DNA from: Phallusia mammillata
Taxonomy: Eukaryota
NCBI GenBank assembly: GCA_965637545.1
Contig: OZ281501.1
Span: forward strand, 6,572,001 to 6,636,000
Direction of reading: 5' to 3'
DNA: 64,000 nucleotides
A program made the translations under genes and the position numbers. Below the pieces are notes generated by a model. The model did not search any database. It was not told the origin of the DNA and saw only the letters and a program-made list of their open reading frames with translations. Numbering within the stretch: the first letter of the stretch is position 1; each line of letters begins with the position of its first letter. Positions 37,001 to 57,900 of this stretch are shown here, in pieces.

Positions 37001-40000
37001 ACCATGCAATATGTATTGTAATTACAATCCAATACAACACAACACTTTGTTGTATAGATTTCTATGCATTAAGGCATTTGAAGTGTCAGTCGGTGCTAGG
37101 GTCAAGGTTTTCTAGTCAAGCGCTCGCTTGTGGAGTCGAAATTTTCTCATTTGAATATGGTCCGAGATGTAACGAGTAGTTTAGCGGTTAACGCTTACCC
37201 GACCAAATAGGTAAATATATGTGGCCGTGGCGAGACTGTCTTCCTTCGGCTCACTCGACCGTCGGAGTACAGGCATAGTAGAAGAATCAGACGAGACATA
37301 AGTCTAGGAATAGCCTGCATAACACCTGCGCTTTACGACTGCCAAATCGCTGATCTCTAACAAGAACAAAGCGATCTGAGTGCCTAGAGACAACAAATCG
37401 GTGTCGAGTTAAGGTAAAGCACTTAATTATCGAATTCCAGCTGTGTTGAACGCAAACCGCGCACTTAAAACAGCTACAGCGAACGCGCGTTTGTGATCGA
37501 AAATCACAAGCAGTAAACAAGCCAAGTGTTTGCAAACAAGAATAGTCGAGATTAAGTTGCGACCTCGACTACGGGATCTTGGTCACCGCTTTTGTGGTCT
37601 CTATTTATAAGCTCAACGTGTGCTTGGGATAAAGTTCCACCACACCAGGGCTCGACAAAGCGGTGCTCTGTTGTTAAAACCCGATCACTGGCCCCAAACT
37701 GACCGCAGAAGGAACGCGGCCTATAACTAATCGGTTGTTACGTGGATAGTTGGACCGGTCGGCTCTTGGCCACGGAATTCGACTAGAATTAGCGGCTGCT
37801 TCCAAGTTCAGTCCTGATGTCGCGTTTCTCCAGCTGCTAGGCGACGGGCGCTTAGCTTTAATCTGTAAACGAGCGCTTATTATGCGATTACGCAAGTTAA
37901 AAGCATAAAGGGCGCGGCTGCTTTCGAGTAACTCATACTATCCACCATTTTGTCTTCAACGAACCTGAGTGTCCGTTGGCTGACCGACGTAACCGACTCT
38001 CCACTTAAAAATCCGGCAAAAAATTGTTTTTTGTGTAATGCTGTGTTGGTTAATTATTTAGACTGCAGCTTGCAACCAAAAAAAGAAACATTGCAAACTG
38101 TTAACGCACTTGAAAAAAAATCTACAAATTTGTGATGAGCCCTGCATTAAATCTGCCAAACTGCCGTTCATATGCTGCGCTTCTTTTCGCAAATTCACAA
38201 AGTAAATGACGGAAAAAGTATACCGAGATAAACATTAAACATTAGTTTTGCTTGCGTTTGTTAAGGATCTTTCACATTAAATTGGTTATTTGTTTTGCAC
38301 AACCACAAAAGAAGTGGGTTTATGCTTTGTTTTTGACAATTAAAATTCAATTTTTTCGTAGAAATATCCAGTGTTCATAGACGCGAAGAAATGCCAAACG
38401 AGAAGCACGAACCTGTTTAGCATTTAAACCTCTATACCGCAGAACGCGCCTGCAAGCCACAGTCAACTATACACTTGCCTCTTATTTTGCAGCCGCCGTT
38501 CGTCATGCGCACGAAACACAACGAAGAAGATCACGCTGTAATACCAAGGCATCAGCGTGGAGTCACTGCTCCAAGTCTTGTGGCCTGGGTCTCTCCACTC
38601 GTGTCACAAACGACAATCCTCAATGCGCTTTGGTGCGAGAGTCAAGACTCTGTGAGCTGCGAACATGTGAAGAGAATTTATACAAACCCAAGGTACGTGA
38701 AATTTTGGAAATAGGAGACTTGCTGAAAACACGAAAGAAGCGTGTTTAGTATTTTTAATTCTTGCGATTTTAATAGGTTTAAAAACCATTTGAAAGCTGC
38801 AAGCTAATAAATAATTAGCTGCAGACAGTACACACTGTTTCGATCTATAACGTCTCATCAGTGCAGCTGGTAACAAAAGATAGGCCGCTGGTGTAGTCAT
38901 GCAACGACACTCCAGTTGGTTGTGAGCAACATGTTAAAAAGCCATACCTCACCTATTCTGTTCGATGCCACAACTGGGTATGCCACAAAATCAATTTGTT
39001 TTGGGAAATGGCGTCTGGATCAAACACCGTTTAAAATTTATCCAGTTAACCCAACTTTAAAATGCAAAATGTCGTTTTAAAATTACGCGCTTTTTATTGA
39101 ATACTCCTATCTTCCATAATCTTGAATAGTTAACCAACAATATAAAGCTGCATGTTTGAGGATATTAGGGTTAGAAGACTTGGTTTCTCAGATGAAAATT
39201 TACCAAGCATACGTAATGCATTAGCCAACGTGACATGTTTGCGGTGCCACGACGGCAAATTTGAGATTCGACCACGAGTGGTGACCGATTCGCTGTCAGA
39301 GCACTCTATAATTTACGGTTGTCGCGCGATCACGGTCGGGGACAAAAAACAAACTGCGCGAGGTTACAGTGCGAAATTCCTCGCATATTTTGCAATTGGA
39401 CGTCGGTCCAAGCACTGACGTTACGACTTTTCAATGCGTTTGCTTGGATGTCAGATTCCGAATGACGGAATGTCACACAAACAAGTCATGCTGTTACAAC
39501 CTGTTGAAAAGCTAGTCCACCAATGCGAAATTTCGGACAAATGTTGGGTTTCCGAGCGGCCTTACATTTAGTGGCAAGTTAAAAATGGGGGAAGTCATTT
39601 TGGTGGTTAACAAACAAATGTTTTTATGATATGGTTGTAAACGACGTGAAGAAAATAAGTCAGTTGGGACCGGCAAAAATAATCAAAATACGGTGGTAAA
39701 TTCAATTAATAGCTTGTGTTACGTTACGCATCTATAAACCCTTCTCATTCACTTCATATACTTTCAAGTATCAAATAAAACAGGCACCGAAAAACCTTAT
39801 GAAGCGTGAAGCTTCATTAAACACTGAAAACTTATCATTGGCATTTGAGTTAACCTGAAAATGTTCCAGTCGCTTCATTTCGTTTCAAGCTTGTAATTTT
39901 TGTTTCCAGAGAGGTAGGCAGTGCAGCAAACCAACTCGTCGGTCACGCCGAAAGGTGACTGTTACATATGCCGGGTGCAGCAGTGTGAGAAAGATCAAGC

Positions 40001-40422
40001 CCAAGTATTGTGGAGAATGCCGCGATAATTCAAGGTAAATTGGTTCGATTTCATATGCAACTTGATTGTGTTCACCAATTGTTTCGCAAAACCTCTATAA
40101 CATAAATCATGTTTAAAAGGTAAACCCCCCTAAACTCAATACATCACTCCTATAGTGCTATATATATACCACTTGGAAAAAAATCGTACAAAACGCTTAA
40201 CCGTACTGCTTTAAAATTTCCAGGTGCTGCACACCGACCGCTACAAGGAATCTACGCCTGCGGTTTAGGTGCGGTGATGGCCGGTATTTCACCAAGACGA
40301 TGCTGATCATCAAGAACTGCGAGTGCAGCCGTAACTGCGCGGATTCAAGCGCAAGGACTTCGCCAAACCACATCAGACTTTCATTGTACGGCGATATGCT
40401 GCGTAAGACAGAGGAGCGGTAA
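34007..40422 (+). CDS. CCN: CCN family matricellular protein A (SP-IGFBP-VWC-acidic hinge-TSP1-CT), 6 exons, 423 aa
   Basis: Exons 34007-34063 (signal peptide MLAQRVILSTLLCVFLAQT), 34250-34466 (IGFBP, 12 Cys, GCNCCKVCAKQ), 35725-36198 (VWC, 10 Cys, plus acidic hinge), 38493-38692 (TSP1, WSHCSKSCGLGLSTRV), 39910-40034 and 40224-40422 (CT: YAGC..YCGEC / CCTP..FRC..CECSRNC). Phases 0-1-1-0-2 are consistent; sum 1272 nt. The vertebrate paralogue (CCN1-6) cannot be assigned. Confidence 0.95.
38814..38870 (-). ncRNA. Type I hammerhead ribozyme motif with GUC cleavage site, antisense in CCN-A intron 4
   Basis: Minus strand AGCTGCA-CTGATGA-GACGTTATAGATC-GAA-ACAGT(GTGT)ACTGT-C-TGCAGCT: intact core, 7-bp stem I, 5-bp stem III, stem II G-C/A-U/C-G with a bulged A and a GUUAUA loop; predicted cut 38824/38823. 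Confidence 0.82.
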
Positions 40423-43400
40423 TTGGTCAGGACACTTTTGGGAGGCATCTTGAAGCTGTGATATTGAACTACTGCTGGGTCGGACGCCCGTCTTTCCTGT
40501 TCTAAGCAGTGTCATGTACCTAACGCACTTCTGGGCCATTCTTTAGCATTTAGATGCCAACTGCGTTCGCCATACGGCGCCTACCGCAACGACAGACACT
40601 GTGATACTTTAACGACCATGTGTTCAACTGAAAAGGGACCAATGATTTGTGTTCCTTTCTGCTAGAATCACACTACCACTGCCCGCAAAGCACACACACA
40701 CTTTTAACTTTGACACGCCGTGTAAATATAAACCCTTTTCTATTGAGATCTTTATTTTGATAAGTTATTGGCTTTCTATATCGTACTCGTGGCAACCAAC
40801 TCCCCACGCGATTTCTTTGTGTATTTCCCTAAATGAAACATCTTAAACATGGTGCACATACCTTGATTTTACTATTCCCAGCGCTTCGGCTATATTTATT
40901 GTCCGGCTTTATTCAGTTAATGTGGCAATTCTATTTCACAAAGCCTATTCGTTTGCTCCAGGGATAGAGCTTTTGTTGCATATTTACCACTGCGCGCCGT
41001 CGTATTCGTTTATTTATTCGCTTCTTTTTGTTTTGGCTATGTACAGCAGTTGTGCTGCATATTTTGATGACCAATTTTTAGGACTTCCAAAAAATGATGG
41101 CGCTACTTTAATTGGCTATGTAATTGTTTCCTTTGAAGTCATACAGTCATTCAGATGTGAGACATTTTCAGAAATGTTCACAAGTTGAAGAAAGCACAAA
41201 ACCAGTTTGGAAGGGAAATTGGTAGTTCCTTGGAATTGTTATAAACAGCTGACTTACAACAGAAGTTAACTTTCAAAGCAAGAAACCAGACATAATGACT
41301 AACTATAGGTTCACCTTTATTATTTAAGAAAAATATTCATTAGATTACACTTTTTACCCATTCTTTTCTCCCCTTCACTGAAATAGTAAACAGTTTCAAA
41401 CAAGTTAGTTTAAATATTGTGACATATTGTTTTGAGAAGAGTATCTATATAAACCAACCTAAGAAAATGAAAACTATTTAGTATTTCTTTGAGAAATGGC
41501 TCTCATGTTTACAAGTGATCAAGTTACTTGACCAAGCGCACCATGTATGAATCACACGTACAGTAAAATACGGACAGCTCATTTTGTTTGAAAAACAACA
41601 AATCATGGCAAGTGGACAACAAGCGGCAAACAACAGCAGCGCCATTAGTTTCATAAGTTCAAAAGTAACGTAACCTACCCAAAATAGGTTTTCGAAAGCG
41701 ATACGTCATAGCAAACGTCATGGCGCGTTGACGTGCGGCGCAGTTAATCAAAAGCGCGCCACGTGATTTGATTGGTCCATCGCTGTCGCACGGGCAATGA
41801 GGCGTAACGACCGGATTCGGTAAATTCCAAGCGAACTGCTGCAGAGAACAATCAGGCTCAAATGGAGTAGAAGACTTGAGTTGACTTTTGCTATAGATTA
41901 CCGTCGACTCGATAGCAGGTAGCTGTTTCCGTACGCGCCTTGATAATCCCTCAGTCCTCTAACAAGGAACACCACTGTTCCTAGAGGGGGTCTATTTTTA
42001 CCCCGTTACGTAACAGGCTTTGGGGTCATGCTTGAGGGGCAGGCTGCGGCGCCCGAGGACCCGCGCGGGGTCAGGATTTGCTGGGGTTGAGCGGAGTGGG
42101 GTTAAACACAACGTTACAAACGTTTTGAGGGTAAGTGGGGGCCTTCTTAATACCTGCCAATACTGTAGACATATATTCCGGCTTGTAGCGACGGCAACCT
42201 GTCATTTGTCCTTGACTTTCGGGGTAAAATCCGATAAACCCTTCGGGGATGGGGGAAAATCGCTGTCATTCCCTGGGAAGACAATAACATGTTATTTATT
42301 TGCCTTCCTAAATCAACCATTTCTAATCCAACATAGTTCGAAGGTTTCGTCCGGACAGTCTTGTCATTGTACGCATTATGTTTGGTGATCCATGTTACGC
42401 CCCAAATACTGAAAACCCAAACAAAATAGAACAGGGTTTGACACGTTGTATACACAAATAAGGACTGTTTGGTATAGAGTTAGATTTACAACTGTGTTCA
42501 AATGTCACATATATATTAATGGATTATTTGTAGTTTGAAAGCGTTGTATATTTACAAGGGTTTGGCTTAAACCAGAGTAAATCCCATATCGCCCGAAATT
42601 TATTTTTACAAAAAATGTTTGGGTGCGGTTTCAAATAAATTCAGACTATTGCAATAAAAAAGTTAAATAAATAGAAGGAAATTCTCCAATACACCATGGT
42701 TTGGTTTGCTTTGGTAACCAGAGGACAACAAGCAGTTCGTTGAGTTTGTGACTCAGTCGTGACTTGCAGAAAATATACCCTTGGTCAGGACGCCAGAATT
42801 GTAAATCGGTCGGAACCCGAAATCACAGGCCCAAAACCCGACCCGCACCCAATTTTTGAAACCGGAAAGTTAGATCGATTAAGGTGGTATTTGATACAAC
42901 TACATGTTTAAGTCTGAAGTGCCAATGAAGCCAGTTTCATTGGAACATACGTCCGAAAAGCCCGACCAAACTCACAACCACACAGAAAGCAAAACATTAC
43001 AACGCTATAATCCTTGCCATTGACCATGCTAGTGGTGATGCCTAATTGAGAAGCTGAACCTTGCACAAACTCTACAAAAGCTATAGGTTGATTTTTGAGA
43101 AAACCGCGGTTTTGTTAAAAAAAGAATAAAGAGGTAGAAGTAAAAAACCCTTTTTAAAAAAAAATTTAACATCCAAAAACTTTTTAGTCTAATATGCTAA
43201 TGTAAAATAAACGAAGTCTAATCAATTCCAGAAGCTATCCGTTGGTTTAAAAAAGAATTTTGTAACTGAAGCACAGAAACAACTTGCATTGGCACCAGCT
43301 CATAAACACAAGTAAAAAAATGCTTTAGACTTTAGAGTGTATCTGCGTCAGTGTGCGATAAAAAATTCCCGAACGTTTAAAATTGACATCTTGACTTTTC

Positions 43401-44387
43401 CCAAAAAATCTCCACAAGCAGGGAAGCACATGCGGTAGGTTTGTGGGATCTAGATGCTCCCTGTTTGTATCACAAATAGGAAGTCAAAATGCTTTCTTCG
43501 ACAACCAGCTGCGATATTTTTCAACTTTGAAGCAACAACAAAAAATATATTCGTTATACTGAATTCATCTTTAAACGTTGTTATTTATTCGAACCTTAAA
43601 CACTCTTGAGCCTTGGTGTGGTACACCAACTGCACCCATCCCTCTCGTGGGGCCTGTCGAAAGTGCCACAAACGTTTGCCGATATTCATGTTAAAGTACA
43701 GGCAAAAACTATGGCAACAGCATCGCATTGAGTTATAGTGGTTTATAAATTTGTGTTAAATTAAACCAGAAGTACCCGGTATTTTTTTCTTTGGTCATAG
43801 TTTATAGCGTTTTTTTTACAAATCATTGCAAAAAAACAATCAAGTGCAAAGGTATTTGGACGAGCAACCAACGCAAAAATATTAGTATTTGCAAATTGGC
43901 CAAGTTTTGAAATCGTGTAGCAAAAGGTGCTTAATTATTGGTGTCGTGAAAAAGTATGCATCGAATTTCCTTGTTCAAAAACTCAGTTGATAACGATTTC
44001 ATGATAAAAAAAACTTATTCTTTATCGCTTGATGATGCCGCAAGTACTTCATCTGAAGAATGTGAGTTTTGTCCAACAGAGCTGCATTAAAAAATACGAT
44101 TTTAACCACGTTGTTTAGACTCAACCAGGTACATGTTTAATTACCGACTAATACATCCCAACCGAAGATTCAAACCGTATATTCAGGCTTTTAACTGTGT
44201 CCTGCCATCAGGTTACAACCAATAGCTATAACCAAATGCTAACAAAAGTATTTCATAGCGTCGCCGTTTTCTGTGAGCTTTTTTCTGTGTTATACAAACG
44301 CAATGTCCTCCTTAATGAAGTTTGTTATTTTCTTGGCCTCAAGCAAAAGCAGTAAAAATTTTGTAGAAATTACTAATGATCATACAA

Positions 44388-44840
44388 TTACATTACTCTT
44401 CGCAAATTTGCAGTAGCTTGTAAAATAGTGCCAGTTGACCTGTTGCTATAATTCGGATTCGCCCGTGCTTGTCCAGAACTCATCGCTGTGGAAGACGTAG
44501 CATGGAGCTGCGACAAGTACTGAAGAAAGTCGAGTTCACTGTTGAACTGCTGCGTGAAGGCATCGCTTGTCGAGATCCTACGAATTAACTGTTTTACATC
44601 ACGTTTGTTCATGGTATCTGCTGGGACTTCTGGCTCTACTCCAGTGGTTTGACACAAGTCTTCTAGAATTTGATCCTCTTTAATTCGAGGAGTCGATGGA
44701 GCAATTGACGAGCGGCGCCGGATTCGATTCGGGTGGTTCCGAATCATAAGGAGGTCGGCATCGCGTCGGACAACATCTTCTTTGTTTGCTGAAACTTTGC
44801 GGGGACTTTGACGATTGTCATGTGTCCAGCAATTTCCCAT
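44388..44840 (-). CDS. Orphan protein exon (148-150 aa), putative dual N-terminal acylation
   Basis: Longest GC-richer ORF in AT-rich surroundings; starts MGNCWT (G2, C4, T6); acceptor TTATTTTCAACACAG just upstream (44859-44858) and donor-like GTAATG at 44396; no family recognised. Confidence 0.6.
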   Translation of the reverse strand: MGNCWTHDNRQSPRKVSANKEDVVRRDADLLMIRNHPNRIRRRSSIAPSTPRIKEDQILEDLCQTTGVEPEVPADTMNKRDVKQLIRRISTSDAFTQQFNSELDFLQYLSQLHATSSTAMSSGQARANPNYSNRSTGTILQATANLRRVM

Positions 44841-47800
44841 TTTGTCATGGCAGCCTGCTGTGTTGAAAATAAATAACTCTCATGGCGCTGGGCTACACAT
44901 TTACCACCATGTCCCTAATTCTTACAGACTTCACAACCTACAAGCCTTGAACACTATGAAAGCAAATTTTCAATAAAGCCTTGTTTGTAGACAAAGGGTA
45001 TTGTTTGAAATAAGATAATTGTTTCGTAATGACAAGTAAATAATAAACAGTGATGGGCGTACCTTTAGATACAACACACAACAGATGTTATTTGGCACCA
45101 AATATCAAAATTTATGAACCGACTAGGTACATTGCTAACAGCACATTCTACGACTCACTAAACTTTGTCCACGGGGTGACAGTCTTGAGCAGCAACCAGG
45201 CAAAATCAAAACGAAAAAGGTAATTTTGTACGTCATAAAACTCCCTTCATGCAAAAAAGGATTGGCCCAAACCCCAAACAATGCGTTCTTATTATCAGCT
45301 TGAAACAAGGTGGAATAAAAACGCCTTGACAGTAAAGCATGATCTAATAATTCAAATCTTTTCTGATTCAAATACAACCAAATACATACAAAAATTCAAA
45401 TACATACAAAAAAATATATATATCTAGTTTTTGTAAAATGTAAGCTACTAAAGTTTTCCACATTTCATGGAATTAGCAATCACAAATAAAACTGATTTAT
45501 AGGACGTTTGGTTCGAGGTTTTAAGAACCAACTACTTTATCGATAATTTAGTCCAAATGAGAACTTTTAGACCGAATGCGGGTGCAAAAATAAAACCAGC
45601 TCATAGTCAAACAGAGTCCACACAAAGATAAAATTATGAAGGCAAGTCAATGGATATATGAAGGCATCAGCTGCTTGAACCACATAATATATTTGACAAT
45701 CCCCACAACCCAAGATGGGCAAATAAAGTTGGCCGCTAAACAAATGCCCTATTCAACAATGCAGAGGTTTGCAAGGAGCACTAAACTATAACTCTCAGGT
45801 GTGAAATTCCTTTGGCGTTTCTGCAGAACGCAGCTGCGACCCGCGTACTAGCTGAAGCAATCAAGTCGAGACTTAGAACCAAGATTGCGGGCAGGTGATA
45901 GGGCATGAATAGCTAGCTAACGAGCGTTGGAATTGTTCATGGAGGGCCTCGCGAGCCGCCTTATCGCAGGCCGTTAGTTTGATTAGGCCGCCGTCGCAAT
46001 TAACGACTGTTGACTCAAGGCATGTCGGACAATGGTGCATCTGTGAAGACCGCTATACGATGAGCAAACACAAATTGGTGCACAAAAAGACTAGCTTGGT
46101 ACGAAATCCCGGGCATTGCATTGCTTGCTAGCGTCGCGATTATCCCTTAGTGGGGGTTTTGTCAACAAAACGATCAATACTCACGTGTCTACCTTTACGT
46201 GATGTTTGGGTATAATGACCAATCGGGTGTATATTGAGACTGGTACGATTCGAACAGTTTTTAGAAATGTTAAGCGAACTTTGATGTATTTGAAAGTTTA
46301 TTTTAAGATGGAGAAACGTAGGCAAAAACAGATGATAAAACTAAATTGCTTTGTAACGATGTCGGAATTTATTAATGTATATTAAACAAGCAAACATGCA
46401 CTTGTCGTTTACAGCATAATAAATGGTGATTTTTCTCAATACTTTTATAGGAATTACCCTTCAATTTGGATGTTCGCAATAGTTGGAGTTTACAACTTTT
46501 ATAAATATTTGATTCTGATAAAAAGCTTCAAATAGGAACAGATCTGGGAATAGATTGAAAAAATGAAAAAATATGACCTGTTTTTTTTTCATGTAGCCCG
46601 TTTTTTCTTTTAATTTCAAAATAAAGCCAGAGACGTGGTGCCCTAAGTAGAACATGGTTGTCATATTTGGAGATGTAGGCCTACATCTCGCCAAAGCATT
46701 TGCGCACGCACAATTTACATTCCGCAATGGCGACAAAGACGGACGACGGAACAAAACCTCCACGTCAAACTTGACCTGTTCCGTTACTTTCAGTTTTAAG
46801 TGAACACTAAACACTTTTCAAAGTTGTAATATCATTCTAAAACATTTTTTTCCAAAAAAAGCAAGAAATGAAAGCCAATTGATATTAAAGCATGTAATTG
46901 GAATAAGGGATCGTTTATCCTTTAAGATTACATGTAAGATTACATGGCCGTGGACAAATTCCAAACCAAATATATCAAACTTTAAAAAAAAACTGTTAAC
47001 TGTTAATGAAAGTTAAACTTTACAACAAATTCGACTGTAGTGTACTTGCCACTTTTGGTTTTTTATCATGGAAAAGTTGTGATTTGTTTGTTTTTGACAA
47101 AGATTTACACCACATGGTCAAGCATGCAAAAGTTTCACACATCGCCAATTTCAATTTTTAACACTGGTGCGTGCAATGGCAATATATATCCTTCTCAACA
47201 ACTTTGATTTCATATAAAATGGCTTGCTGTTGATGTGGGTGCGTGGATTGAGCATTTTGGGAATTTTGAGTAGACCCATTTCTCGAAGGGGACAGGGTCT
47301 GCACACCTGAAAAATTTGTTGTGGTAAACAATCAGAAATAGTGCAAGTATGGGGAAACAACTGTAAAGGGTAAAGTGCATCAAAACGCGAGTTGACGCAA
47401 ATTGCTCTGCGTGCCAAGCATTCCAGCCATCAGACTTGGGGTCGGTTAAGGCCCCGTGCCACGCGAACACTGACAGGTTTCGAGGCTTTTAGCGTCTTGC
47501 ACTGTTTGCCCTGTGTGCCTGTTTAGCAGCGCAAGAGCTAAAACGACCTCTGGGCAGAATAACGGCGCCCCAAAGAAACACGACTGTCCAGGATTTTCAG
47601 AGAAATCTACCTTTTGTTAAGATACCATCGAGATCACGTGAGAGTCGACGTGCTGACATTTTGTATGTTGTTGTGAAATTATTTGTTTGAAATTTTGCAG
47701 TAAAACCAAAGGGCTTGTTTGTGGTTATCCGCTTGCCTCGAGTATTCGTTCAATTTTGTTCCTAATGGTGATACTAACAATGAATGTTGAAACTAACATT

Positions 47801-49694
47801 ATGTCTGGTAGTATAAATGATTCACCATAAATACAAAACACTTGGTAGTACCGGAACTGATCTATGTAAAAAAAACAGTCATCTCGAACAACAGTATAGA
47901 AAGCAATATCCTAAAGACAAATACACCCAATTGACCCAACTTGAAACCGCACATTCACTGAAGCGAAAATACCAGTAGGAAGCAGTGTCAGTGAACTTTG
48001 TAGGATATAAACAAGGGTTGTTAGGACATGAATCTCCGGAGCTTTGATATCGAAGCCTCCGTCTCTGTCCGCTTTGTGCCCTAAATCCGCGGCTTATCCG
48101 AACAACACCCGGTTGAACGTCGCTCGCAAGACCGCGGATTCGAGGGCAAGCTGACAACTTTATGTGATTGAAAGGCGTGATAATTTATTTACGCCGTAAA
48201 CCACCCCTTACAAGAGGGGCTCCCCTGGGGTGCTAATCGGGCCTCGCTTCCTCGCAGGCCCCTTTCGTCAACACGGCGCCCCGCCTAAAAAGAGGGGCTT
48301 TAAATGCGTGACGGATGGAAGAAATGAAAGACGTCGTAAGTGAAGTTTGCGCTGGGTTATAATTAGTTCAGGGAACATTTTGCCAGATTGCAATCGCGAA
48401 AATGGAGGGGCTGAACGCACACGTTTTCAAGCATATTTCCGCAAGATACGCCTGCCTGGTGTAACAAACGTCACAGATGCCTATAAAGTGTGCATATTTC
48501 GGATTTATCCTACCAGTTCGAGTGACAGATGCGGTTAGGGGGCGTGACAACAGGTAATGGTAACCGTGACGTCAATTGTGACGACAGCAAAGGACATCTC
48601 ATTTTGAATAATGACGTCAAAATAGAGAGAATTTTGCGGCTTTGCATGATCTTTAATTCAATAAGAACGTTAAAGGCTGCACACATTATACGATGTATGT
48701 GTAAATATAGTCTATAATACTAAATGTACAAAACAAATAGTGGTATCAGCTGGAGGTTCCAAGCTGGGTTAAATAGTATTTAGTCCGCGGCAGTCAGTGG
48801 GTGGGTCGGACCGCTTTTTGACAAATCTGTCAAGTTTTCTATTTTTAACACAGCTTCAAAGGCAGAAAGGGTTACGGCAGCAGGTCAGCATGTACCTTCA
48901 ACACATTGGCCTCGGTGCAGATCAGAATCCTTCTGTAGCTGCTTTTCACGCCCTGTAACGAGCAGTCACTCATTTCCATTCGTTCAGGACGCCTGGTGCC
49001 CGCGACTTGAATTTGCGAGAAAAAAAAGCCGTGGTGTAAAAGGAAGCTGGCTACTTAAAAGCAATACAAAGGGCAGCTAAGGCCGCGACGCGCAAAAAGA
49101 CTCGTTTAATTTCAGTGCTGGCGACGTCATGTCGCAGGGGACCAGAGAGCAAGCTATTAGACGCAAAACATCGGCGCCGTAGTCAACATTACGGCGCGCT
49201 GCGGTGGTGTTTTTCCGGCGGAATGGCTTCATCAAGCCTGGGGTCGCAGGCTCGATTAGAGCGGAATTTTTGTTGAGATTGCGGACATTAATGGGATAAT
49301 GAGAGGAATTTCCGATCAAAGTAGATGACATTCGCGTGCGAGTTCTTAACCTAGCAGGAAAGTTTGAAATCAACACGTGAAAGAAAAAAATTGAAAAATG
49401 CGTGCCACGCCAAATAGCCTCGATTATTGCTGAGGTTGGCATAAATTCCAAGGCATCAAATGCACTATGCGCACAACACAGGTTTGCGGCAAACTGACTT
49501 TTACGCGCAATTAGAGTGGCAGATCGGGGATTTGTGCTTCACTGGCTCGGCAGACTTCGCACAAACAGCACTATTAAAGGTTTTTACTTACCAGTGATCT
49601 CTTCATGCCGTTGCAGGATTGTTTACAAACGCATATTATATAACTGTGCTTACTGTCAGAAGCCGGTGTAGAATATTAATCTGAAAACAATAAT

Positions 49695-52600
49695 ATGGGG
49701 CATTCAGCACGACGACCGATCAGTATCAAGGCTGTCATATCAACAGCTGTAATCACCACCTTTGTGTTTCTGCTGCTTCAAACGCAAGAGATTGAAGCAG
49801 GAAGGAACAGATCGTCCAAGGGCGGCAGGCGCGGCAAAAACTCGTGCAAGAAACAAGTTTCGCCATGGAATGAATGCTCGAAGCCTTGCGGTCTTGGGTT
49901 ATCATCGCGTGTCAAGAAGAAGAGACATTGCAAATCGAAGCTCGAGACCAGGCTCTGCATCGTTCGACCCTGCGAAAATGACACCAAGGTAAGTTGTGTC
50001 GCAAATTTTTGATATGCAAGTTGCCTACTGAACATATTTCGGTCTTGACAAAACATATGGCTAAATAAAGAATCGAAAGTAGTTACAGGTTCCGTTTGCG
50101 TGTGTAAATTTCGGTTTGCCTAATATTTCGCTAGTGTTTTTTTTTTTCAAATTTCGTTTATTGTAAGGCTGCAGTCGGCCAAACACCGTCCCGAAAGTTC
50201 AAGCCCAAAACCCAGGCCGTACGCAAATTTTACACAAAAATCAGTCCGACTAACGTTTGAGGGTTAGATTTTGGAAAAGAAATTGCGACCCAAATGTAAA
50301 GTCGGGCCCGAATCAAGCTTGTTTTAATGTCCGGGGCGACTCTGCGCTTCATTTCACCCGTTCAAGTGGACTAAAAACAGTTTCAGACGCCTCAGCGCTA
50401 CTACCCAAGCCCCTAGTGCGGAGAAGTACGAAGATTTCTATTGTGCATTACCATATCACATAATTAAATTCAAAGACATCGTTTTTCATAACAGACATTG
50501 ACGAATTGAGGTTGAATTTGCCACTGGTCCCGGAAGTCAGTGAGAAATATGTTCGTTGCCACATAAACAATTTTCATTGAAAACGTGTTTACAAAATAAT
50601 GTAACCTTTACAGTTGTATATAGAGCTTGCTCAACAAAGATTGTTTATAAGTTACGGGAATTTGGCTTCAATTTGCGGGGAACAAAACCGCTGTTGACCC
50701 GATAACACCACGGAGCAGTAACATGAATGACACAATAACCTTGTTGGTTAGGTCAAAATCGTATTAAGCCCGTCTAGCGCCATGATTAGCACAAACTGTA
50801 AACCGGTTTATCGAGCCTTCCCATGTACCAAATTTACGCGCCCTGCTGATTCCCAGAAACACAGACAAAAGTCCAAATTGTTTACATTAGTAAAGGGCAT
50901 GTTTTGTAAAATACAGATTGAGGGCTATTGAGAAGAAGCTTTTGAAAAATAAAAGTTTTGAACACGTCCGCTTAAACTTAACAAAACAAGATTGATTTTA
51001 ACGTTTTAAAACCACGAAAGTGTGTTACGATTTGAGATGAAAACCAAAAAACACAATTCCATTGTTACGGATGGCATGCCAGTTTAAAGTGAATATATGA
51101 ACAAAGATAGCCAAAAAGACATATTGCGTGGCGATTGGAGTTCATTCAAAGCGCAAGTCAAATCTCCAAGCGGTTAGTAAAGTCAATATTTCAATTAAAG
51201 TGTCAAATGTTTAATCATCATATATGCGTATGTGAAACTACAAACTGAGTGATTGAGAGTGCTATCTGATCGCTTTTTGCACAAAACCATTAATCAGTTT
51301 AATTGGTGATTCACCGTTTTACTCTTTAACATTTTAAAAAGAGCAGTATTCCTTTAACATTAAGTTAAGCGTGGTGGTAAATACATTTGCATATGCGAGC
51401 AATCATCAAAGTTCTACATCAAAGTATACGTTAATGTGCGCATCGCAGTCTGGTATGCGAAACATGGTGGTTCGGTACAACGCCCTACAACGAGCGATTT
51501 CATTGATGTCGCGTGCCACACCTACGGACGATTAACGGCGGCTGAGCGGATGAGAAGGCCACATAAATCCGTCTGTACACCCAGGGGTGGCAGCGTGCAT
51601 GATATCATTTCTTTTCATGGGACCTTGGCACACAAGTGCGATATAGGTTGCGATTGTCGTTGCATAAACTAAATTTGGAAATAATATGAAAATCCATTTG
51701 GAAATGTTTGGCCAAATGTAAAGTTTTAACTGTAACTTTTGAATTATTTTTATGAAACAAATGCGTTACAAAGATAAAAAAAATCTAGTTTAGAAGTCAA
51801 TTGGTGTATAGGCCTGCGAATGTTTTGACGATTTTAAGTTATTTTGAGAAAAATGTGCTTTAAATATTGTTTAAGGGCAGAAATGGCGGACTGTGGTTTC
51901 GCATCAATTAAAATCTCAACCAGTTACTAAGCAAATTCAATACCTTCCGTAAAATTGCAATAAAACTTTCGTGGGGGTCGGTTGAACAGAAACTCATTGT
52001 TCCAATCGCAGTAGCGGCCGATTCAAGAAGGTGTTCAGCGAGGTTTCAACTGGTGGGTTTTTTCGACCGATTTTGCTTCGCAGCAGGCAAAACAAACAGC
52101 AAAAGCAATGAAAATCGAATCTTTCACGGGATCGCAAACAAACCAGATGTAACGGGACGTTCATAGCCGACGCATGCCCAAGAACCGATTTACGAGCAGC
52201 ACAATACATTGTCAACAAAACCCATTTGACTTACCACCTGCGAAATCTCTTAAATCAACCCCCTGCCGAGTTGGAGACAAAATTGCGTAGAATGGATGCT
52301 TTGTCGAAACTTGACTTTGCTTCGATTTTATTACGTTTTGACACAATAAAATCCAATACATTGGTGTTTGGCGATTCCAAGAATATTTATTCAAAATTTA
52401 AAAGATGGAAAGTCAAATAGATTTTTTCATGAAAGTTTATCGTTTTTCACCATTACCTCGGTACTAAATAATATATTTGTAAACATCGTTTTTCAACAAA
52501 AACGAACATACAGTTTCGTGCATGGTCAACACCAATTTTCAAAAAGACCAATGTACCTATACAGTTACACATATAAAATAGTTCAATACCTATGATCACG

Positions 52601-54941
52601 AAATTTAAAAAAAATTGTTTCATGTCTTTTCGGTAAACATGGCTCATCTGCAAGCGCATGTCGTGGTCGCCATGCGGCAAGCAGCAAAATCATCTTTTCT
52701 ACGCTCTGTCATCAGTCGCAGCTTCCACTTGCATTCAGGCGCCATTTGGCAACGCCGGCGCCTTCCCTACGCATTCCTGGCGCTCTTCTGCCAGTCACAT
52801 GAGAGCGCCGGCAAGTACGTACGGCGTCGTCGGGTCGAAGTTAAACACCAGAGTTTGTCCCCCTTTCGCCGCCGAAAGCCAATAAACAGTCATTAGGCGG
52901 CGGTCTTGGTGCCAAGGACAGACCCAATCTTGGGCGTTGAAAGCTCCCATTGGAAGATTTGACTGCAAACGCGTCAATGCCGTGTATCAATAAACGATGT
53001 GGCTTAACGAGTAAATACAAAATAAATTGTTTACGTGCTTTCGGAGCATGGTGATGACGGGGCACGTCACAATTGACTTGCGAATCACACGTAAACTTTA
53101 TACAGCATGTAATGAGTTTTCCTAAGTTTCAACTGCTTGTCAATTATGTCCATTCATAGACAATAGCGCTGCCACGTAGCAATGCGCCTCTCCGTCAACA
53201 AAACGCCACTGACGTTTGAGCATAATTCCATTGCATGCACGAGCGTCTTTCGCATTGGACAAACAACGCAATAGAAACCACAAGGCATCGGCGCGGAAAG
53301 ACGGATTTAAAATTACGGGTTCCTGCACTTTTTGCCCGATCCCGATTTCCGGGAAAGGAAAAAGATACCTGGACGAGCTTGGGCGATGACGTCATCGTTT
53401 GATCGAAAGCGACGAGGGAATTAGTTTCGGCACAGTGACGTATCCGTGGCAGGGGAATTGAGAGGATGTAACAATATCCTAACCAGCACAGTATATGTTG
53501 ACGATTACTCACTGAATGCGGCTGTGGGAATTTGCCTTGACGCACAAATGAGAAATATCTTAGTAGTTTTTCGCACCCACAATTATCACCATATCCTCGT
53601 TAATCTAACGGGGTAATACCATATTTGGTTGTTTGAGGCCTATAGGTTAAAACGTTCGTTTGCAAATCAAATTGAAAATTGACAAAACCACATTTTAAAG
53701 CAATAAACAAAAAATTCACCGTAATACAGTGACACTAATGTTTACCAAAAAATAAATTGCTCGACCAAATCTTTTGGTAAATAATTTTAACCACTGCTAA
53801 TACTAGAATGATTTCCATTGGCGATTTTCTTAAAAACCTAATTCTTAAGCACAAGTATATTTTGGTCGAATTACAGATCGACACCAGTGGGAATAGGACA
53901 AATAATGGCGGCTTCGAGCAAAAAAATAAATCTGCCGTAACTATTAACGCACCAATTACAGAAATAACTTCATGTTTGGCCATGACCGTGAAGGGAATTT
54001 TGTCATAAAACCTAAAACGAATTCAAAAAGGCCTTAAAAATACATATTAACTATATTAGTGATTTAGACTTTAGTCGACGTACAAACAAATAATATTTTA
54101 TCTTTTAGAAGCTTCCTACAACCAGGGCTTGTCAGCCAAACCTACCCAGAAAAGGGAGGGAATATATCAAGTACATCAAAGCAAAGAGTGAGAAAAAATA
54201 CAAGATGAGATATTGTGGTTCTTGCACTGACACAACCAAGTAAGTGATTCAGAAGTAAACTATGACCACAGTGCGTTAAGGCGCCCGTATATAGATGTGA
54301 AACTGTAGATGTTTAAACGTGATTCAATGTACAACAATTTAATTAGGTGTCGAAAATACCAATACGATTAAAAAAAACAGTAGCTTTACCAAAATTCTGT
54401 AGAAAATCTCTTATCTTTGTCATGTATTTTATTTATAGTGTGTTTTCCCCAAATCAAATGCTATATTTTCGGCGCTTTTGTTTCAATTAGGTTGCGTTAC
54501 AGGTCGAAAATGAAATGTCATAAACAGAAAAACAATGATTTCATTAAACATCTGAAGAAATCGTTGTTTTTCTCAAATGAACGCCTATGTTTCCCGCTAT
54601 TTAAGTTTCATGTATCATATACAAAAAAAAGAAAGATTTTTTTCTTTTGTGCTTCGTATTTATATTATTAAACACGTGCCTACACGTGCCTACACGTGCC
54701 TACACGTACCTACGCTTTGAGTGAGTGCTAAGGCCAAATTGTCACCAAAAATATTTTTTATAGATGCTGCACGCCACTTAAGAGCAAGACCAAAAAGATC
54801 TGGTTCGCTCGCGCAGATGGAACACGGTTCTCTAAGAAGATGATGTTCATAAGAAAATGTCACTGCCACCGGGACTGTCCGACCGACCTGGTTCCGGTGA
54901 TCCCGCTTCAACAAGACACGATCCGGCCGCCGAGTCAGTGA
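49695..54941 (+). CDS. CCN: CCN family protein B, apparently N-terminally truncated (SP-TSP1-CT only), 3 exons, 200 aa
   Basis: Exons 49695-49988 (signal peptide MGHSARRPISIKAVISTAVITTFVFLLLQTQEIEA, then TSP1 CKKQVSPWNECSKPCGLGLSSRV..C..ETRLCIVRPC), 54109-54239 (CQP..YKMRYCGSCTD), 54764-54941 (CCTP..MMFIRKCHCHRDC). Phases 0 and 2 match gene A; in-frame TAA at 49677-49679 upstream of the ATG; TATATAA at 49637-49643. Confidence 0.88.
53619..53628. promoter_or_regulatory. CArG box (SRF site) in CCN-B intron 1, near a perfect CRE (53387-53394)
   Basis: CCATATTTGG matches CC(A/T)6GG exactly. Confidence 0.35.
54673..54712. repeat. 10-bp tandem repeat ACACGTGCCT x4
   Basis: Directly visible; each unit carries an E-box CACGTG (last copy degenerate); the flank resembles about 56605-56630. 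Confidence 0.85.
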
Positions 54942-57900
54942 CGCCCCGGTGACAAGCGAACCGAATGTACCGAGCGGTCTCGGCCGGACCTGGGTCAGAT
55001 ACGGTTGACTGCGCCGCTGACATCCGGCCAATAATGACGACGCTGCAAAGGCCGAGCGCAAAACTCATTGACAAATGCACTTGTTACGTTACAAACACTG
55101 CGCACGCGAACAAATTTCAGTGGACCTCGGCGGACTTTATCCAATTTGTTATGTCTTGTTTTCGTGTCTTTCCAAATTTATTTTTTTGCTTTTTGGGCGA
55201 TAGTAGTGGCTAATGTAAGGATCCGGGGCAATCTTTTACGTTAATTCGTCTGTTTAATTGCTTTAAACAATTTCAAAAAAATTCTGCAAAGCCTGCCAAT
55301 AATTACTGTAAACTCAGGCAAATTACCATAGTGGATAGGATTGGATTGGCTTCGTATTTGACTGACACTGCTCACAATATAGTGCGAAGTGACAAATAGT
55401 GACAGGGCTTATAACCGAGCTTTAAAAGTTTAAACAGCGAATGCCAAGTTTCTTCCCTAGATGCCCCAGTAATGAAGATGACATTTCGGTCGGGTACGAC
55501 CAAATATACATCACACGGTAAAAATACAACCGAAAATCCATCAACGAATTCCAAACGTTTGATCCACGCAATAAAAGATAAAGCCACTGAGTCAGCTGAA
55601 TGTCAGACATACAAACTCAAGCTAATGACCTTTACTTCAAGAAAACAAGTGATATGTCGTCTAATCGGCAGTTGACATCGCCAAGCCTCAACACACCCCG
55701 AACCCTAATCTTACCCTTGTACGTTATCAGGTGGGCTGAGTTCGTTCACACGCCACAAACAGCGCAACAGTATTCGACAACCCCTTGCTCAAAACGCGAC
55801 CATCAGAAAACTGAAGACATGAGCCTAAAGTAATTTGTTACATTTCAAACTTACAGGGACCCGGAGGGAGCCCCCGAAGACCGTTGCCATTTACCCAACG
55901 CGTCTGTTATCACCCGCTGGGGCACAAGCGCAAATTGCTTCACTGGGTTACTGTTGGTCTTGCTTGGGGCACGCACGTTGGTCCTATTTTGTCAACGGTA
56001 ATTTAAATCCGCAAAATGGGTCCTGACTCAAGGAGTGAGCCTTGCACGCGAGCAAGTAACTTTCGACATACATTAGACATGCTTTCTTCGGCTACGAGGA
56101 CACAGAAAAACAAAGCTCCGACGCTCTTCGACCACAATGCATTTCTTCCACAATTGTAACCGACGCGTTAATTCATTTTGTCAACGTTACCGGCGCCTAT
56201 TTTACAAACGTTTTGACCACAACTGCTCAAATTTTGTGGAGAAATAGACTACAGAAACAACTTACCACTGAGCAATCTTATACGAATGTACAAATGATTT
56301 GACTCATGAAACAACTTTTACTTTGTGGTTTACCTGTTTTCACCAACTGATTATCATTCCGTTTATCAACCAAACTTTAAATAAAGGAATTACCAACAAG
56401 TTTCTGGTTATTTTAGAAATAATATTTATCGCCTTCTATCATTTTTGTTGTAGACCATTTGGCTCCCTTCTGTTGGTATAATGTGCACCTTACTGTTCCT
56501 ATTATTGTTGTTATTCTTTCTGTTTCTTGTATTTTCTCCTGTTTTGGATACAATCTTATTGTACATATTCTTTTTCTTATGTGCTTGGTATTTATTTGAT
56601 TGAACACCTGCCTACGTTTTAAGTGAGTGCTATTGTTGAAATGGTAATCTCGTTATTGTCTTTTGCCCCAAGTTGTCAATAAAACTTTGTCTACAAATTT
56701 TATCTTGTGAAAAAGTTTCCACGCACAAGGGCAAGAAGTTGGAACTAAAATGGTAGTTTTAATACAAGCGCTTTAAATGAGGGTATGGCTTAACGTAGGA
56801 TCCGTACAACTAGTTTTAATACGGCTAACCAAAATGCCAGTTTTGACAAACTTAAATTACATTTGTATTCTAGTTTTGACAAACTTTGAATACATTTGTA
56901 TTTTAAAGCAAAGGGTATATTTGCTGCTGCCAAGCATAAATGTACACACCACTTATTGAGATTTTATAATTCTTTGCATTTAGTAAAGGATAAAATAAAA
57001 GTATTTGCCCAAATTAGTGCCACACCATTTCAATGCTCGGTCAATACATTGGATGGTATTACTTAACCCCTTAACATAGCTGTGGGTTTTCACCACAATA
57101 GGAAGGCTAAGAATCATAAGAGGTTTTTGTAAAATTTGGAATAGGGCCACAACCGAAGTGACGGATAGAGCACAGTCTCCCATCATTTCTCAACCATTGC
57201 TATTTCAACGCGTCTATTCAGAAACAAATTTAAAACAAATAAACTTCCGTCGGCCCCTTTACGGGTGAACGAAGTAGCCGAAATTTTGACTCCGAATAAC
57301 CTTTGAATTTGATACAGAGGCATATGTACAGCTAGATTCGCTTAAGGTTTTTCCGTGAAAGACAGGCGATCGAAGAAGGCACGTACCGACAATGCAAGGA
57401 CTGCAGGTGGTCCACAAAAACCGGAAACATTTCAGTGAATATTCTCCTCATGTGAAAAGTCCCTTAAATTCGATTTAAGTTCATACACGAAGTTTCAGAT
57501 TCGCTTGGAAAGCTGTCAAAGGGCCTGTCAATAACAGACAGAGACTACAGGTGGTCCACAAGCGCAGTAAAAGCGCATGTGTGTTATGTTACGGGCTGAC
57601 GAACATATCCCCTCGTGATGGGTGTCCAACGCAACGTAGTCGCAGTTTCTAAAAAGGCGCGTGTGTCATACGGTTGTAGAGGATGCCACACACAGAGCTT
57701 CTAAACTGTCAAGAATCTATGCAACCTGATGGACTAAGGAATCCTGACTTTTTGGAACTGGAAGATTGGTTTCAAAATTTGTAACTCAGCTACTAGGAAA
57801 GAACAGAAACGCTCTACCCCCTTTTGAATTCACACAATAGGTTTAAAGCGGTGCGGTATCAGCAAGTATAAAACCCTGATGAACCAAACCATAGCGTAAA

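What the first reader, a model, noticed from the sequence alone, without database searches (positions are those of the whole stretch)
54109..54941. CCN-B cystine knot has lost both cysteines of a single disulfide
Seen: CCN-A has all ten CT cysteines; CCN-B lacks the 2nd (YAGCSS vs YIKAKS) and the 7th (RFRCGDG vs WFARADG) and keeps the other eight. Established, as I recall the CCN2 annotation: the 2nd and 7th CT cysteines (C273-C307) pair with each other outside the knot core. Inference: the coordinated loss leaves no free thiol, which argues that CCN-B is a folded protein under selection, with loosened finger tips and possibly altered receptor or dimer specificity.
Basis: partly seen in the sequence, partly recalled or inferred. 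Interest (0 to 1): 0.7.

Follow-up and report, generated by a model that had tools for sequence, protein, structure and literature searches.

The report
Sea-squirt half-CCN lost one disulfide
A short secreted signalling protein of the sea squirt Phallusia mammillata, related to connective tissue growth factor, is expressed and conserved. It has lost exactly the two cysteines that normally staple the two finger tips of its cystine-knot domain, which makes it a tidy natural variant rather than a new kind of system.

Summary
Window 54109-54941 holds the last two exons of a three-exon gene, CCN-B. Its product has a signal-like segment, a CCN-type TSP1 domain and a C-terminal cystine knot (CT). The CT keeps eight of the ten CCN cysteines. 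Cys2 is Ala123 (GCA, 54181-54183) and Cys7 is Arg158 (CGC, 54810-54812). The neighbouring CCN-A keeps all ten.

The genome is Phallusia mammillata. The spliced product equals the database protein CAB3267754.1 except for Q192E. RNA-like contigs from four runs in three studies show both splice joints.

Orthologues in Ciona intestinalis and C. savignyi have the same three-exon structure and, in C. intestinalis, the same position next to a full-length CCN. All of them lack the same two cysteines: Ser or Val at position 2, Arg at position 7.

The two cysteines are partners. Mass spectrometry reportedly found CCN2 C273-C307, and Norrin C55-C110 is seen in crystals. The AlphaFold2 model keeps a confident cystine-knot fold.

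The loss is therefore a real, old, paired loss in a gene under purifying selection. Any effect on binding remains inferred.

The Ciona orthologue is the notochord gene published as "Ctgf" (KH.C9.172).

The gene and its truncated architecture were already known. I found no report of the disulfide loss.

Interest is moderate.

The parts
49601..49694 (+). 5' leader of the CCN-B mRNA. It holds an in-frame TAA at 49677 and a short upstream ORF starting at 49605.
   Evidence: RNA-like contigs begin at 49601-49646 in four runs.
49695..49988 (+). CCN-B exon 1 coding part: Met1, a hydrophobic signal-like segment and a CCN-type TSP1 domain with six cysteines (residues 51-93).
   Evidence: Pfam TSP1_CCN at E 9.4e-15. 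The model matches the CCN3 TSP1 structure 6rk1 with TM 0.80 and 51% identity.
49989..54108 (+). Intron 1 (GT..AG, phase 0).
   Evidence: A joint skipping 4120 bases is seen in contigs of X1, X2, X5 and X7.
54109..54239 (+). CCN-B exon 2: the linker and the first part of the CT, with Cys1 (C106), the Cys2 position (Ala123), Cys3 (C134) and Cys4 (C137).
54181..54183 (+). Codon GCA = Ala123, at the column of CT Cys2 (human CCN2 C273).
   Evidence: The position is Ser (AGT) in C. intestinalis and Val in C. savignyi.
54240..54763 (+). Intron 2 (GT..AG, phase 2), just before the CC doublet. It holds four tandem copies of the 10-nt unit CACGTGCCTA at about 54674-54714.
   Evidence: A joint skipping 524 bases is seen in four runs. 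CCN-A and both Ciona genes have an intron at the same position.
54764..54941 (+). CCN-B exon 3 coding part: Cys5/6 (C143, C144), the Cys7 position (Arg158), Cys8/9 (C174, C176), Cys10 (C180), a non-conserved tail and the stop TGA at 54939-54941.
   Evidence: Pfam Cys_knot gives 23.5 bits, E 7e-05, against a curated cut-off of 24.
54810..54812 (+). Codon CGC = Arg158, at the column of CT Cys7 (human CCN2 C307, Norrin C110).
   Evidence: The position is Arg in all three species (CGG in C. intestinalis).
54942..55300 (+). 3' UTR. It continues beyond the stretch that was laid; the two longest contigs are about 2 kb in all.
   Evidence: table 8.
39910..40422 (+). CCN-A CT domain, for comparison. 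It has two exons (39910-40034 and 40224-40422) and all ten cysteines. Cys2 is TGC at 39976-39978 and Cys7 is TGC at 40270-40272.
   Evidence: Pfam Cys_knot at 4.5e-06.

Best explanation
CCN-B is a functional, transcribed gene of Phallusia mammillata. It encodes a 200-residue, very basic protein made of a signal-like N-terminus, a CCN-type TSP1 domain and a C-terminal cystine knot.

It belongs to a lineage of 'half-CCN' genes that lie next to a full-length CCN gene, and it arose before Phallusia (Ascidiidae) and Ciona (Cionidae) split. In that lineage the CT lost Cys2 and Cys7 together. These two form the one disulfide that lies outside the knot and staples the tip of finger 1 (beta1-beta2 loop) to the tip of finger 2 (beta3-beta4 loop).

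Shown here:
- The six knot cysteines and the Cys5/Cys10 pair are kept, so no thiol is left odd.
- The domain is still predicted to fold as a CTCK.
- The tips have not decayed. Position 7 is an invariant Arg, encoded by different codons in the two genomes.
- The flanking residues I121, K124 and W155 are invariant in the lineage and absent from other CCNs.

Inferred:
- The tips are no longer covalently tied. They were remodelled into a more basic surface that is itself under selection.
- This probably changes which partner binds there (LRP-type co-receptor, heparan sulphate). In Norrin the same site and the same disulfide serve Lrp6 binding.
For: Gene model and expression:
- Joints 49988|54109 and 54239|54764, both GT..AG, appear in contigs of four runs from three studies. 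None shows a sequence difference from the window.
- An in-frame stop lies 18 nt before the ATG.

Identity:
- The spliced product equals P0001 (Phallusia mammillata CAB3267754.1) except for Q192E.

Orthologues:
- P0002/P0015 (C. intestinalis XP_002130917) and P0017 (C. savignyi H2Z9U0) have the same architecture.
- Their cysteine columns read CSCCCCRCCC and CVCCCCRCCC.
- The Ciona gene has the same three exons and lies downstream of a 420-residue full-length CCN.
- The three half-CCNs form a clade with 100/99 support.

Selection, Phallusia against Ciona:
- In TSP1+CT, pN is 0.345 and pS is 0.868 (saturated).
- In the linker and N-terminus, pN is 0.55-0.66.
- Lineage-specific invariant residues flank the lost pair.

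Pairing: PMC10326224 and PMC3828517.

Fold:
- CT pLDDT is 84-96.
- The best PDB matches are VWF CTCK (Z 6.9, rmsd 2.4 over 77 residues), sclerostin (Z 6.7) and Norrin (Z 6.3).
Against: - No disulfide map, structure or binding data exist for this protein, and no CCN CT structure is in the PDB by sequence.
- I could not read the model's coordinates, so the proximity of residues 123 and 158 is inferred from topology, not measured.
- The structural Z-scores are below 8 and the Foldseek E-values are above 0.001.
- The primary mass-spectrometry paper (Kaasboll 2018) could not be read.
- The three species are related, so they count as one loss event.
- Only Phlebobranchia could be sampled.
- The signal peptide was not tested with a predictor. 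A published table lists the Ciona protein with a transmembrane segment and no signal peptide.
Confidence: 0.85

Rival explanations
1. The loss is real but functionally neutral. In a half-CCN without the N-terminal modules the finger-tip disulfide was dispensable. It was lost by drift, one cysteine first and the now-useless partner soon after, and binding specificity did not change.
For: - Position 2 varies freely (Ala, Ser, Val).
- Norrin C55A/C110A still folds and binds Fz4 normally.
- Cystine-knot folds tolerate removal of disulfides: VEGF disulfide-deficient mutants crystallise (1mkk and 1mjv).
Against: - Arg at position 7 is invariant although its codon differs (CGC and CGG).
- I121, K124 and W155 next to the lost pair are invariant in the lineage and absent from 29 other CCN CTs.
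- The Norrin double mutant does lose Lrp6 affinity and signalling.
Confidence: 0.3
2. The remaining eight cysteines are wired differently from canonical CCNs. For example, Cys5 and Cys10 might form intermolecular bonds in an obligate dimer. In that case the loss of Cys2/Cys7 would be part of a wider change in disulfide topology or oligomeric state.
For: - In Norrin the cysteines that by motif correspond to Cys5 and Cys10 are C95 and C131, and both form inter-chain bonds. This correspondence is my own reading.
- The review notes that C292-C329 of CCN2 is only predicted and may instead serve dimerisation.
Against: - AlphaFold2 gives a canonical monomeric CTCK with high confidence.
- The Cys5/Cys10 question applies to all CCNs, so nothing ties it specifically to the loss of Cys2/Cys7.
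Confidence: 0.1
3. CCN-B is a decaying duplicate (pseudogene) of CCN-A, and the missing cysteines are early damage.
For: - It is a truncated tandem neighbour of a full-length CCN.
- Its stem branch in the tree is long (1.05).
Against: - The ORF is intact in three species from two families.
- Splice sites and intron positions are conserved.
- Spliced RNA is found in three studies.
- dN is far below the saturated dS in the domains.
- The Ciona orthologue has a characterised notochord enhancer and expression pattern.
Confidence: 0.02
4. The apparent loss is an assembly or sequencing error in this window.
For: None found.
Against: - Contigs from four independent runs carry no differing letters.
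- The transcriptome-derived protein P0001 has the same residues.
- The orthologues agree.
Confidence: 0.01

Closest known systems
CCN family (CCN1-6; CTGF/CCN2, NOV/CCN3), Pfam TSP1_CCN plus Cys_knot
   Same: - The TSP1 domain is CCN-type (E 9.4e-15).
- The CT is closest to CCN CTs, at about 48-52% identity over the last exon.
- The gene lies in tandem with a full-length CCN and shares its CT intron.
- Databases name it connective tissue growth factor / CCN family member 2.
   Different: - It has no IGFBP or VWC module.
- Signal segment and TSP1 sit in one exon.
- The CT has 8 rather than 10 cysteines.
- All 27 other CCN CT domains aligned here that cover all ten columns keep all ten cysteines.
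The bioactive C-terminal fragment of CCN2 (domains 3-4), released by cleavage of the hinge (Kaasboll 2018, as reviewed in PMC10326224)
   Same: It has the same two domains, TSP1 plus CT, without the N-terminal half that the review describes as auto-inhibitory.
   Different: - Here the two-domain form is encoded directly rather than made by cleavage.
- The C273-C307 bond, reported in both monomer and dimer of the CCN2 fragment, cannot form.
Norrin (NDP) and its C55A/C110A mutant; VWF and mucin CTCK domains
   Same: - They share the CTCK fold (Z 6.3-6.9).
- Norrin C110 aligns with Arg158.
- The C55-C110 bond staples the same two loops.
- The laboratory double mutant is the nearest analogue of the natural state seen here.
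   Different: - Sequence identity is about 20-24%.
- Norrin and VWF have 11 cysteines, with inter-chain bonds.
- Norrin has no TSP1 domain.
- Whether CCN-B binds any LRP is untested.
CCN5/WISP2 and CCN6/WISP3 as precedents for divergent CCNs
   Same: - CCN5 lacks a whole module, the CT.
- CCN6 lacks four conserved cysteines in its VWC.
- Loss of modules and of cysteines therefore has precedent within the family.
   Different: In those precedents the losses are in other modules. I found no report of a CCN that lost a CT disulfide.

Membership tests
CCN family (four-module matricellular proteins) | N-terminal IGFBP module | tested here: not met
   Transcripts start at 49601-49646. An in-frame stop precedes the ATG. 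Pfam finds only TSP1_CCN in exon 1. The orthologues also lack the module.
CCN family (four-module matricellular proteins) | VWC module | tested here: not met
   Same evidence as for IGFBP. P0001, P0002 and P0017 carry only PF19035 among the precomputed Pfam domains.
CCN family (four-module matricellular proteins) | CCN-type TSP1 repeat with six cysteines | tested here: met
   PF19035 at E 9.4e-15, 55 bits against a cut-off of 27. Six cysteines lie at residues 51-93. The model matches 6rk1 (CCN3 TSP1) with TM 0.80.
CCN family (four-module matricellular proteins) | CT domain with ten conserved cysteines | tested here: not met
   Eight cysteines are present. Cys2 is Ala and Cys7 is Arg. The domain is otherwise CCN-like.
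CTCK / cystine-knot domain (Pfam PF00007) | The six knot cysteines (CCN2 C256-C293, C284-C323, C287-C325) in the CGxC ... CC ... CxC arrangement | tested here: met
   C106, C134, C137, C144, C174 and C176 are present and aligned. The disulfides themselves cannot be tested here.
CTCK / cystine-knot domain (Pfam PF00007) | Profile match at or above the curated threshold | tested here: inconclusive
   Exon 3 alone scores 23.5 bits against a cut-off of 24, E 7e-05. The joined domain was not scanned as one piece. NCBI and UniProt label the orthologues 'CTCK domain-containing protein'.
CTCK / cystine-knot domain (Pfam PF00007) | Two-finger beta-hairpin fold around the knot | tested here: met
   The AlphaFold2 model has strands 116-120/123-129 and 143-157/163-177 with pLDDT 84-96. 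The best structural matches are VWF CTCK, sclerostin, Norrin and DAN-family proteins, Z 5.4-6.9.
CTCK / cystine-knot domain (Pfam PF00007) | Finger-tip disulfide (Norrin C55-C110, CCN2 C273-C307), conserved in Norrin, mucins and VWF | tested here: not met
   Both cysteines are absent in three species.

The most novel reading that the evidence does not exclude
The tunicate half-CCN is a genetically encoded counterpart of the proteolytically activated CCN2 C-terminal fragment. Its finger tips were unstapled and rebuilt around an invariant Arg and Trp into a new, highly basic binding site, which gives it a different co-receptor or matrix specificity from full-length CCNs. If so, the Ciona notochord gene 'Ctgf' is not a functional equivalent of vertebrate CCN2 but a lineage-specific ligand.
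Probability: 0.25. Interest if true: 0.6.

Novelty: new variant of a known kind. Interest (0 to 1): 0.4.

Why it matters
(1) The paired loss is independent, evolutionary evidence for the Cys2-Cys7 pairing in CCN CT domains. No solved CCN CT structure turned up by sequence search, and the review of the field says the bonding pattern cannot be reliably read from AlphaFold models.

(2) It offers a natural, selected version of the Norrin C55A/C110A experiment. It therefore gives a starting point for asking what the finger-tip staple does in CCN and CTCK ligands.

(3) It bears on how a published gene is interpreted. The Ciona notochord gene studied as 'Ctgf/Ccn2' (KH.C9.172) is this half-CCN, not the full-length CCN next to it. 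It lacks the N-terminal half and one disulfide, so statements about conservation with vertebrate Ctgf need care.

Tried and rejected
Searches that gave nothing further:
- PDB by sequence for a CCN CT structure. Only Norrin, VWF and VEGF-type hits came up, at E of 0.07 or above.
- More orthologues. The exhaustive HMMER search with exon 3 gave only the Phallusia and Ciona clusters plus canonical CCNs. The profile search added C. savignyi only. A CT-only search from C. savignyi had four candidates and found nothing new.
- Distribution outside Phlebobranchia is therefore unknown. No tool here searches eukaryotic genomes by translated similarity.

Analyses with limited yield:
- dN/dS proper was not obtainable, because synonymous sites are saturated (pS above 0.75). 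I report the contrast between domains instead.
- The tree does not resolve whether CCN-B derives from the neighbouring CCN-A.

Papers and primers:
- The primary mass-spectrometry paper is not held.
- One of the six published Ciona primers tried did not map within three mismatches.
Full report
**What is in the sequence**

The stretch 54109-54941 holds two coding exons on the + strand.
- Exon 2 is 54109-54239. It ends with AA, and the donor GT follows at 54240.
- Exon 3 starts at 54764 with the A that completes Lys142. It runs to the stop TGA at 54939-54941.
- The product reads ...RACQPNLPRKGREYIKYIKAKSEKKYKMRYCGSCTDTTK|CCTPLKSKTKKIWFARADGTRFSKKMMFIRKCHCHRDCP....

A first exon (49695-49988) encodes Met1, a hydrophobic segment and a TSP1 repeat. 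Pfam calls that repeat TSP1_CCN at E 9.4e-15. It calls exon 3 Cys_knot at 23.5 bits, E 7e-05, just under the cut-off of 24.

About 9 kb upstream on the same strand lies CCN-A. It has an IGFBP exon (34238-34516), a TSP1 exon near 38537 and a two-exon CT (39910-40034 and 40224-40422) with all ten cysteines.

- Aligned on CCN-A, the ten cysteine columns of CCN-B read C A C C C C R C C C.
- Cys2 is Ala123 (GCA, 54181-54183).
- Cys7 is Arg158 (CGC, 54810-54812), one transition from the TGC of CCN-A.
- The 27 other CCN CT domains gathered here that cover all ten columns have all ten cysteines. They are vertebrate CCNs plus the full-length CCNs of Phallusia and Ciona. Two further rows are N-terminally truncated fragments and have the nine they cover.
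- The mature protein has 14 cysteines, six in TSP1 and eight in CT, so none is left without a possible partner.

**The gene is real and expressed**

Contigs of four runs from three studies were laid on 49400-55300. The runs are RNA by the tool's guess. They cover only the exons at depth.
- They join 49988 to 54109 and 54239 to 54764, both GT..AG.
- They start at 49601-49646 and run on past 55300.
- They show no differing letter.
- An in-frame TAA at 49677 closes the frame 18 nt before the ATG. This mRNA therefore cannot encode IGFBP or VWC modules.

The exhaustive HMMER search with exon 3 returned P0001, a 200-residue protein of Phallusia mammillata (CAB3267754.1, named 'connective tissue growth factor'). 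It equals the window's spliced product except for Q192E in the tail. The window is therefore from this ascidian.

**Orthologues share both substitutions**

- P0002/P0015 (Ciona intestinalis XP_002130917, 207/214 residues) and P0017 (C. savignyi H2Z9U0, 214 residues) have the same architecture, a signal-like segment plus TSP1 plus CT.
- Their cysteine columns read CSCCCCRCCC and CVCCCCRCCC.
- The Ciona gene has the same three exons, including the intron just before the CC doublet.
- It lies downstream, on the same strand, of a 420-residue CCN with IGFBP, TSP1 and Cys_knot. The CT of that neighbour keeps all ten cysteines.
- The three half-CCNs form a clade with 100/99 support on a long stem. 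The tree does not resolve where that clade attaches.

The pair was therefore lost once, before Ascidiidae and Cionidae separated, and the state has been kept since. I found no further orthologues. The tools cannot search other tunicate genomes, so the wider distribution is open.

**Selection**

Synonymous sites are saturated between Phallusia and Ciona: pS is 0.86-0.91 in TSP1 and CT. A proper dN/dS cannot be given. The contrast within the gene is still clear:

| Region | pN | Amino-acid identity |
|---|---|---|
| TSP1 | 0.34 | 56% |
| CT | 0.30 | 53% |
| N-terminus | 0.55 | 27% |
| Linker | 0.66 | 17% |

The finger tips themselves are conserved in a lineage-specific way.
- Arg158 is invariant, with different codons (CGC, CGG).
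- I121, K124 and W155, next to the lost pair, are invariant in the three species and absent from 29 other CCN CTs.
- Position 2 varies (Ala, Ser, Val).
- The CT is very basic, with 22 Lys+Arg against 5 Asp+Glu in 75 residues.

**Do the two cysteines pair?**

No CCN CT structure is in the PDB by sequence.
- The 2023 review from the laboratory that did the work assigns the CCN2 knot to C256-C293, C284-C323 and C287-C325.
- It says C273 and C307 are placed to connect the finger tips, and that this bond was identified by mass spectrometry in both monomeric and dimeric C-terminal fragment. C292-C329 is only predicted (PMC10326224).
- I could not read the primary paper.
- In the Norrin crystal structure, C55-C110 connects the beta1-beta2 loop to the beta3-beta4 loop and is conserved in mucins and VWF (PMC3828517).
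- HMMER aligns CCN-A Cys7 and CCN-B Arg158 with Norrin C110.

The paired loss seen here is itself covariation evidence for the pairing.

**Fold**

AlphaFold2 was run on P0001 with 20 homologues.
- Mean pLDDT is 75, and the 10-residue block means are 84-96 across residues 111-180.
- There are two hairpins, 116-120/123-129 and 143-157/163-177.
- Ala123 opens the second strand of finger 1. Arg158 is the first loop residue at the tip of finger 2, which fits the Norrin topology.
- The best solved matches to residues 103-184 are VWF CTCK (Z 6.9 and 6.7, rmsd 2.3-2.4 over 77-79 residues), sclerostin (Z 6.7), Norrin (Z 6.3) and DAN-family proteins.
- The TSP1 part matches CCN3 TSP1.
- These Z-scores are middling by the tool's own note, but the list is homogeneous and agrees with the sequence family.
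- I could not read the coordinates, so the distance between residues 123 and 158 is not measured.

**How it most likely works**

Shown:
- The knot and the Cys5/Cys10 pair are intact.
- The staple between the finger tips cannot form.
- The tips carry their own conserved residues.

Inferred:
- The two fingers are held only non-covalently, possibly by W155 and R158 packing on finger 1.
- They present a remodelled basic surface.

The closest experiment is Norrin C55A/C110A. That mutant folds and binds Fz4 as well as wild type (IC50 37 against 34 nM). It competes threefold less well for Lrp6 (207 against 72 nM) and signals less, and K54 and R109 next to those cysteines are essential for Lrp6 binding. 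By analogy the change would tune co-receptor or matrix binding rather than the fold.

The two-domain architecture also mirrors the CCN2 C-terminal fragment, which the review describes as the active form released from an auto-inhibited precursor. Whether the loss was adaptive or merely tolerated is not settled. I put neutral loss at about 0.3.

**Link to published work**

- Five of the six published Cr-Ctgf (KH.C9.172) enhancer primers tried (PMC11728170, Table S2) map uniquely to the Ciona locus.
- The '5-prime upstream' forward primer maps at L001 8666. The 'intron 1' fragment spans 10120-11258, inside the half-CCN gene at 10001-12426. One reverse primer did not map.
- The Ciona gene reported as expressed mosaically in notochord cells from mid-tailbud I to late tailbud I is therefore the orthologue of CCN-B, not the full-length neighbour.
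- A 2019 comparative paper already lists XP_002130917 as a 207-residue protein with only TSP1 and CT (PMC6610741).
- In the papers I searched and read I found no mention of the missing cysteines.

**Verdict**

The gene and its truncated architecture were known, and the paired disulfide loss appears unreported. This is a new variant of a known kind, of moderate interest.

Exons were given to search tools by reference. The joined product of the window was never sent to a search or fold tool; the database protein P0001 stood in for it. Joining was done only in local scripts.

Noticed in passing
L001:8666-11258 (Ciona AP043575.1) and window 49695-54941: Published Cr-Ctgf (KH.C9.172) notochord enhancer primers map onto the Ciona half-CCN gene. 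The 'Ctgf' of the Ciona notochord literature is therefore the orthologue of CCN-B, not the adjacent full-length CCN.
   Followed up: yes
window 54674-54714: Four tandem copies of the 10-nt unit CACGTGCCTA (the last one degenerate) lie in CCN-B intron 2. Each contains an E-box-like CACGTG.
   Followed up: no
window 49601-49694: The 5' leader has an upstream ATG at 49605 that opens a 12-codon ORF. Only the longest contig (run X5) reaches it.
   Followed up: partly
window 51488-51651, 52044-52297, 53242-53418, 53516-53668: Short, low-depth contigs from runs X1 and X2 lie inside CCN-B intron 1, some on the opposite strand. They could be unspliced precursor, repeats or separate transcripts.
   Followed up: no
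window 40034/40224 and 54239/54764; L001 about 4475/4772 and 12061/12247: A phase-2 intron just before the CC doublet of the CT domain is shared by Phallusia CCN-A and CCN-B and by both Ciona genes. From memory, vertebrate CCNs encode the CT in one exon, so this may be a tunicate-specific intron that marks common origin.
   Followed up: partly
window 54912-54914 (codon 192): The window encodes Gln192 where the database protein CAB3267754.1 has Glu. This is probably an allele, and it lies in the non-conserved tail.
   Followed up: partly
L001:6956-7824: A 158-residue gene with no Pfam hit lies on the minus strand between the two Ciona CCN genes. I did not check whether Phallusia has a counterpart in window 40500-49600.
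   Followed up: no
P0002 residues 1-46; window 49695-49805: The Ciona protein has a long N-terminal stretch before its hydrophobic segment. A published table lists that segment as transmembrane, with no signal peptide. Cleaved signal versus signal anchor is open.
   Followed up: no
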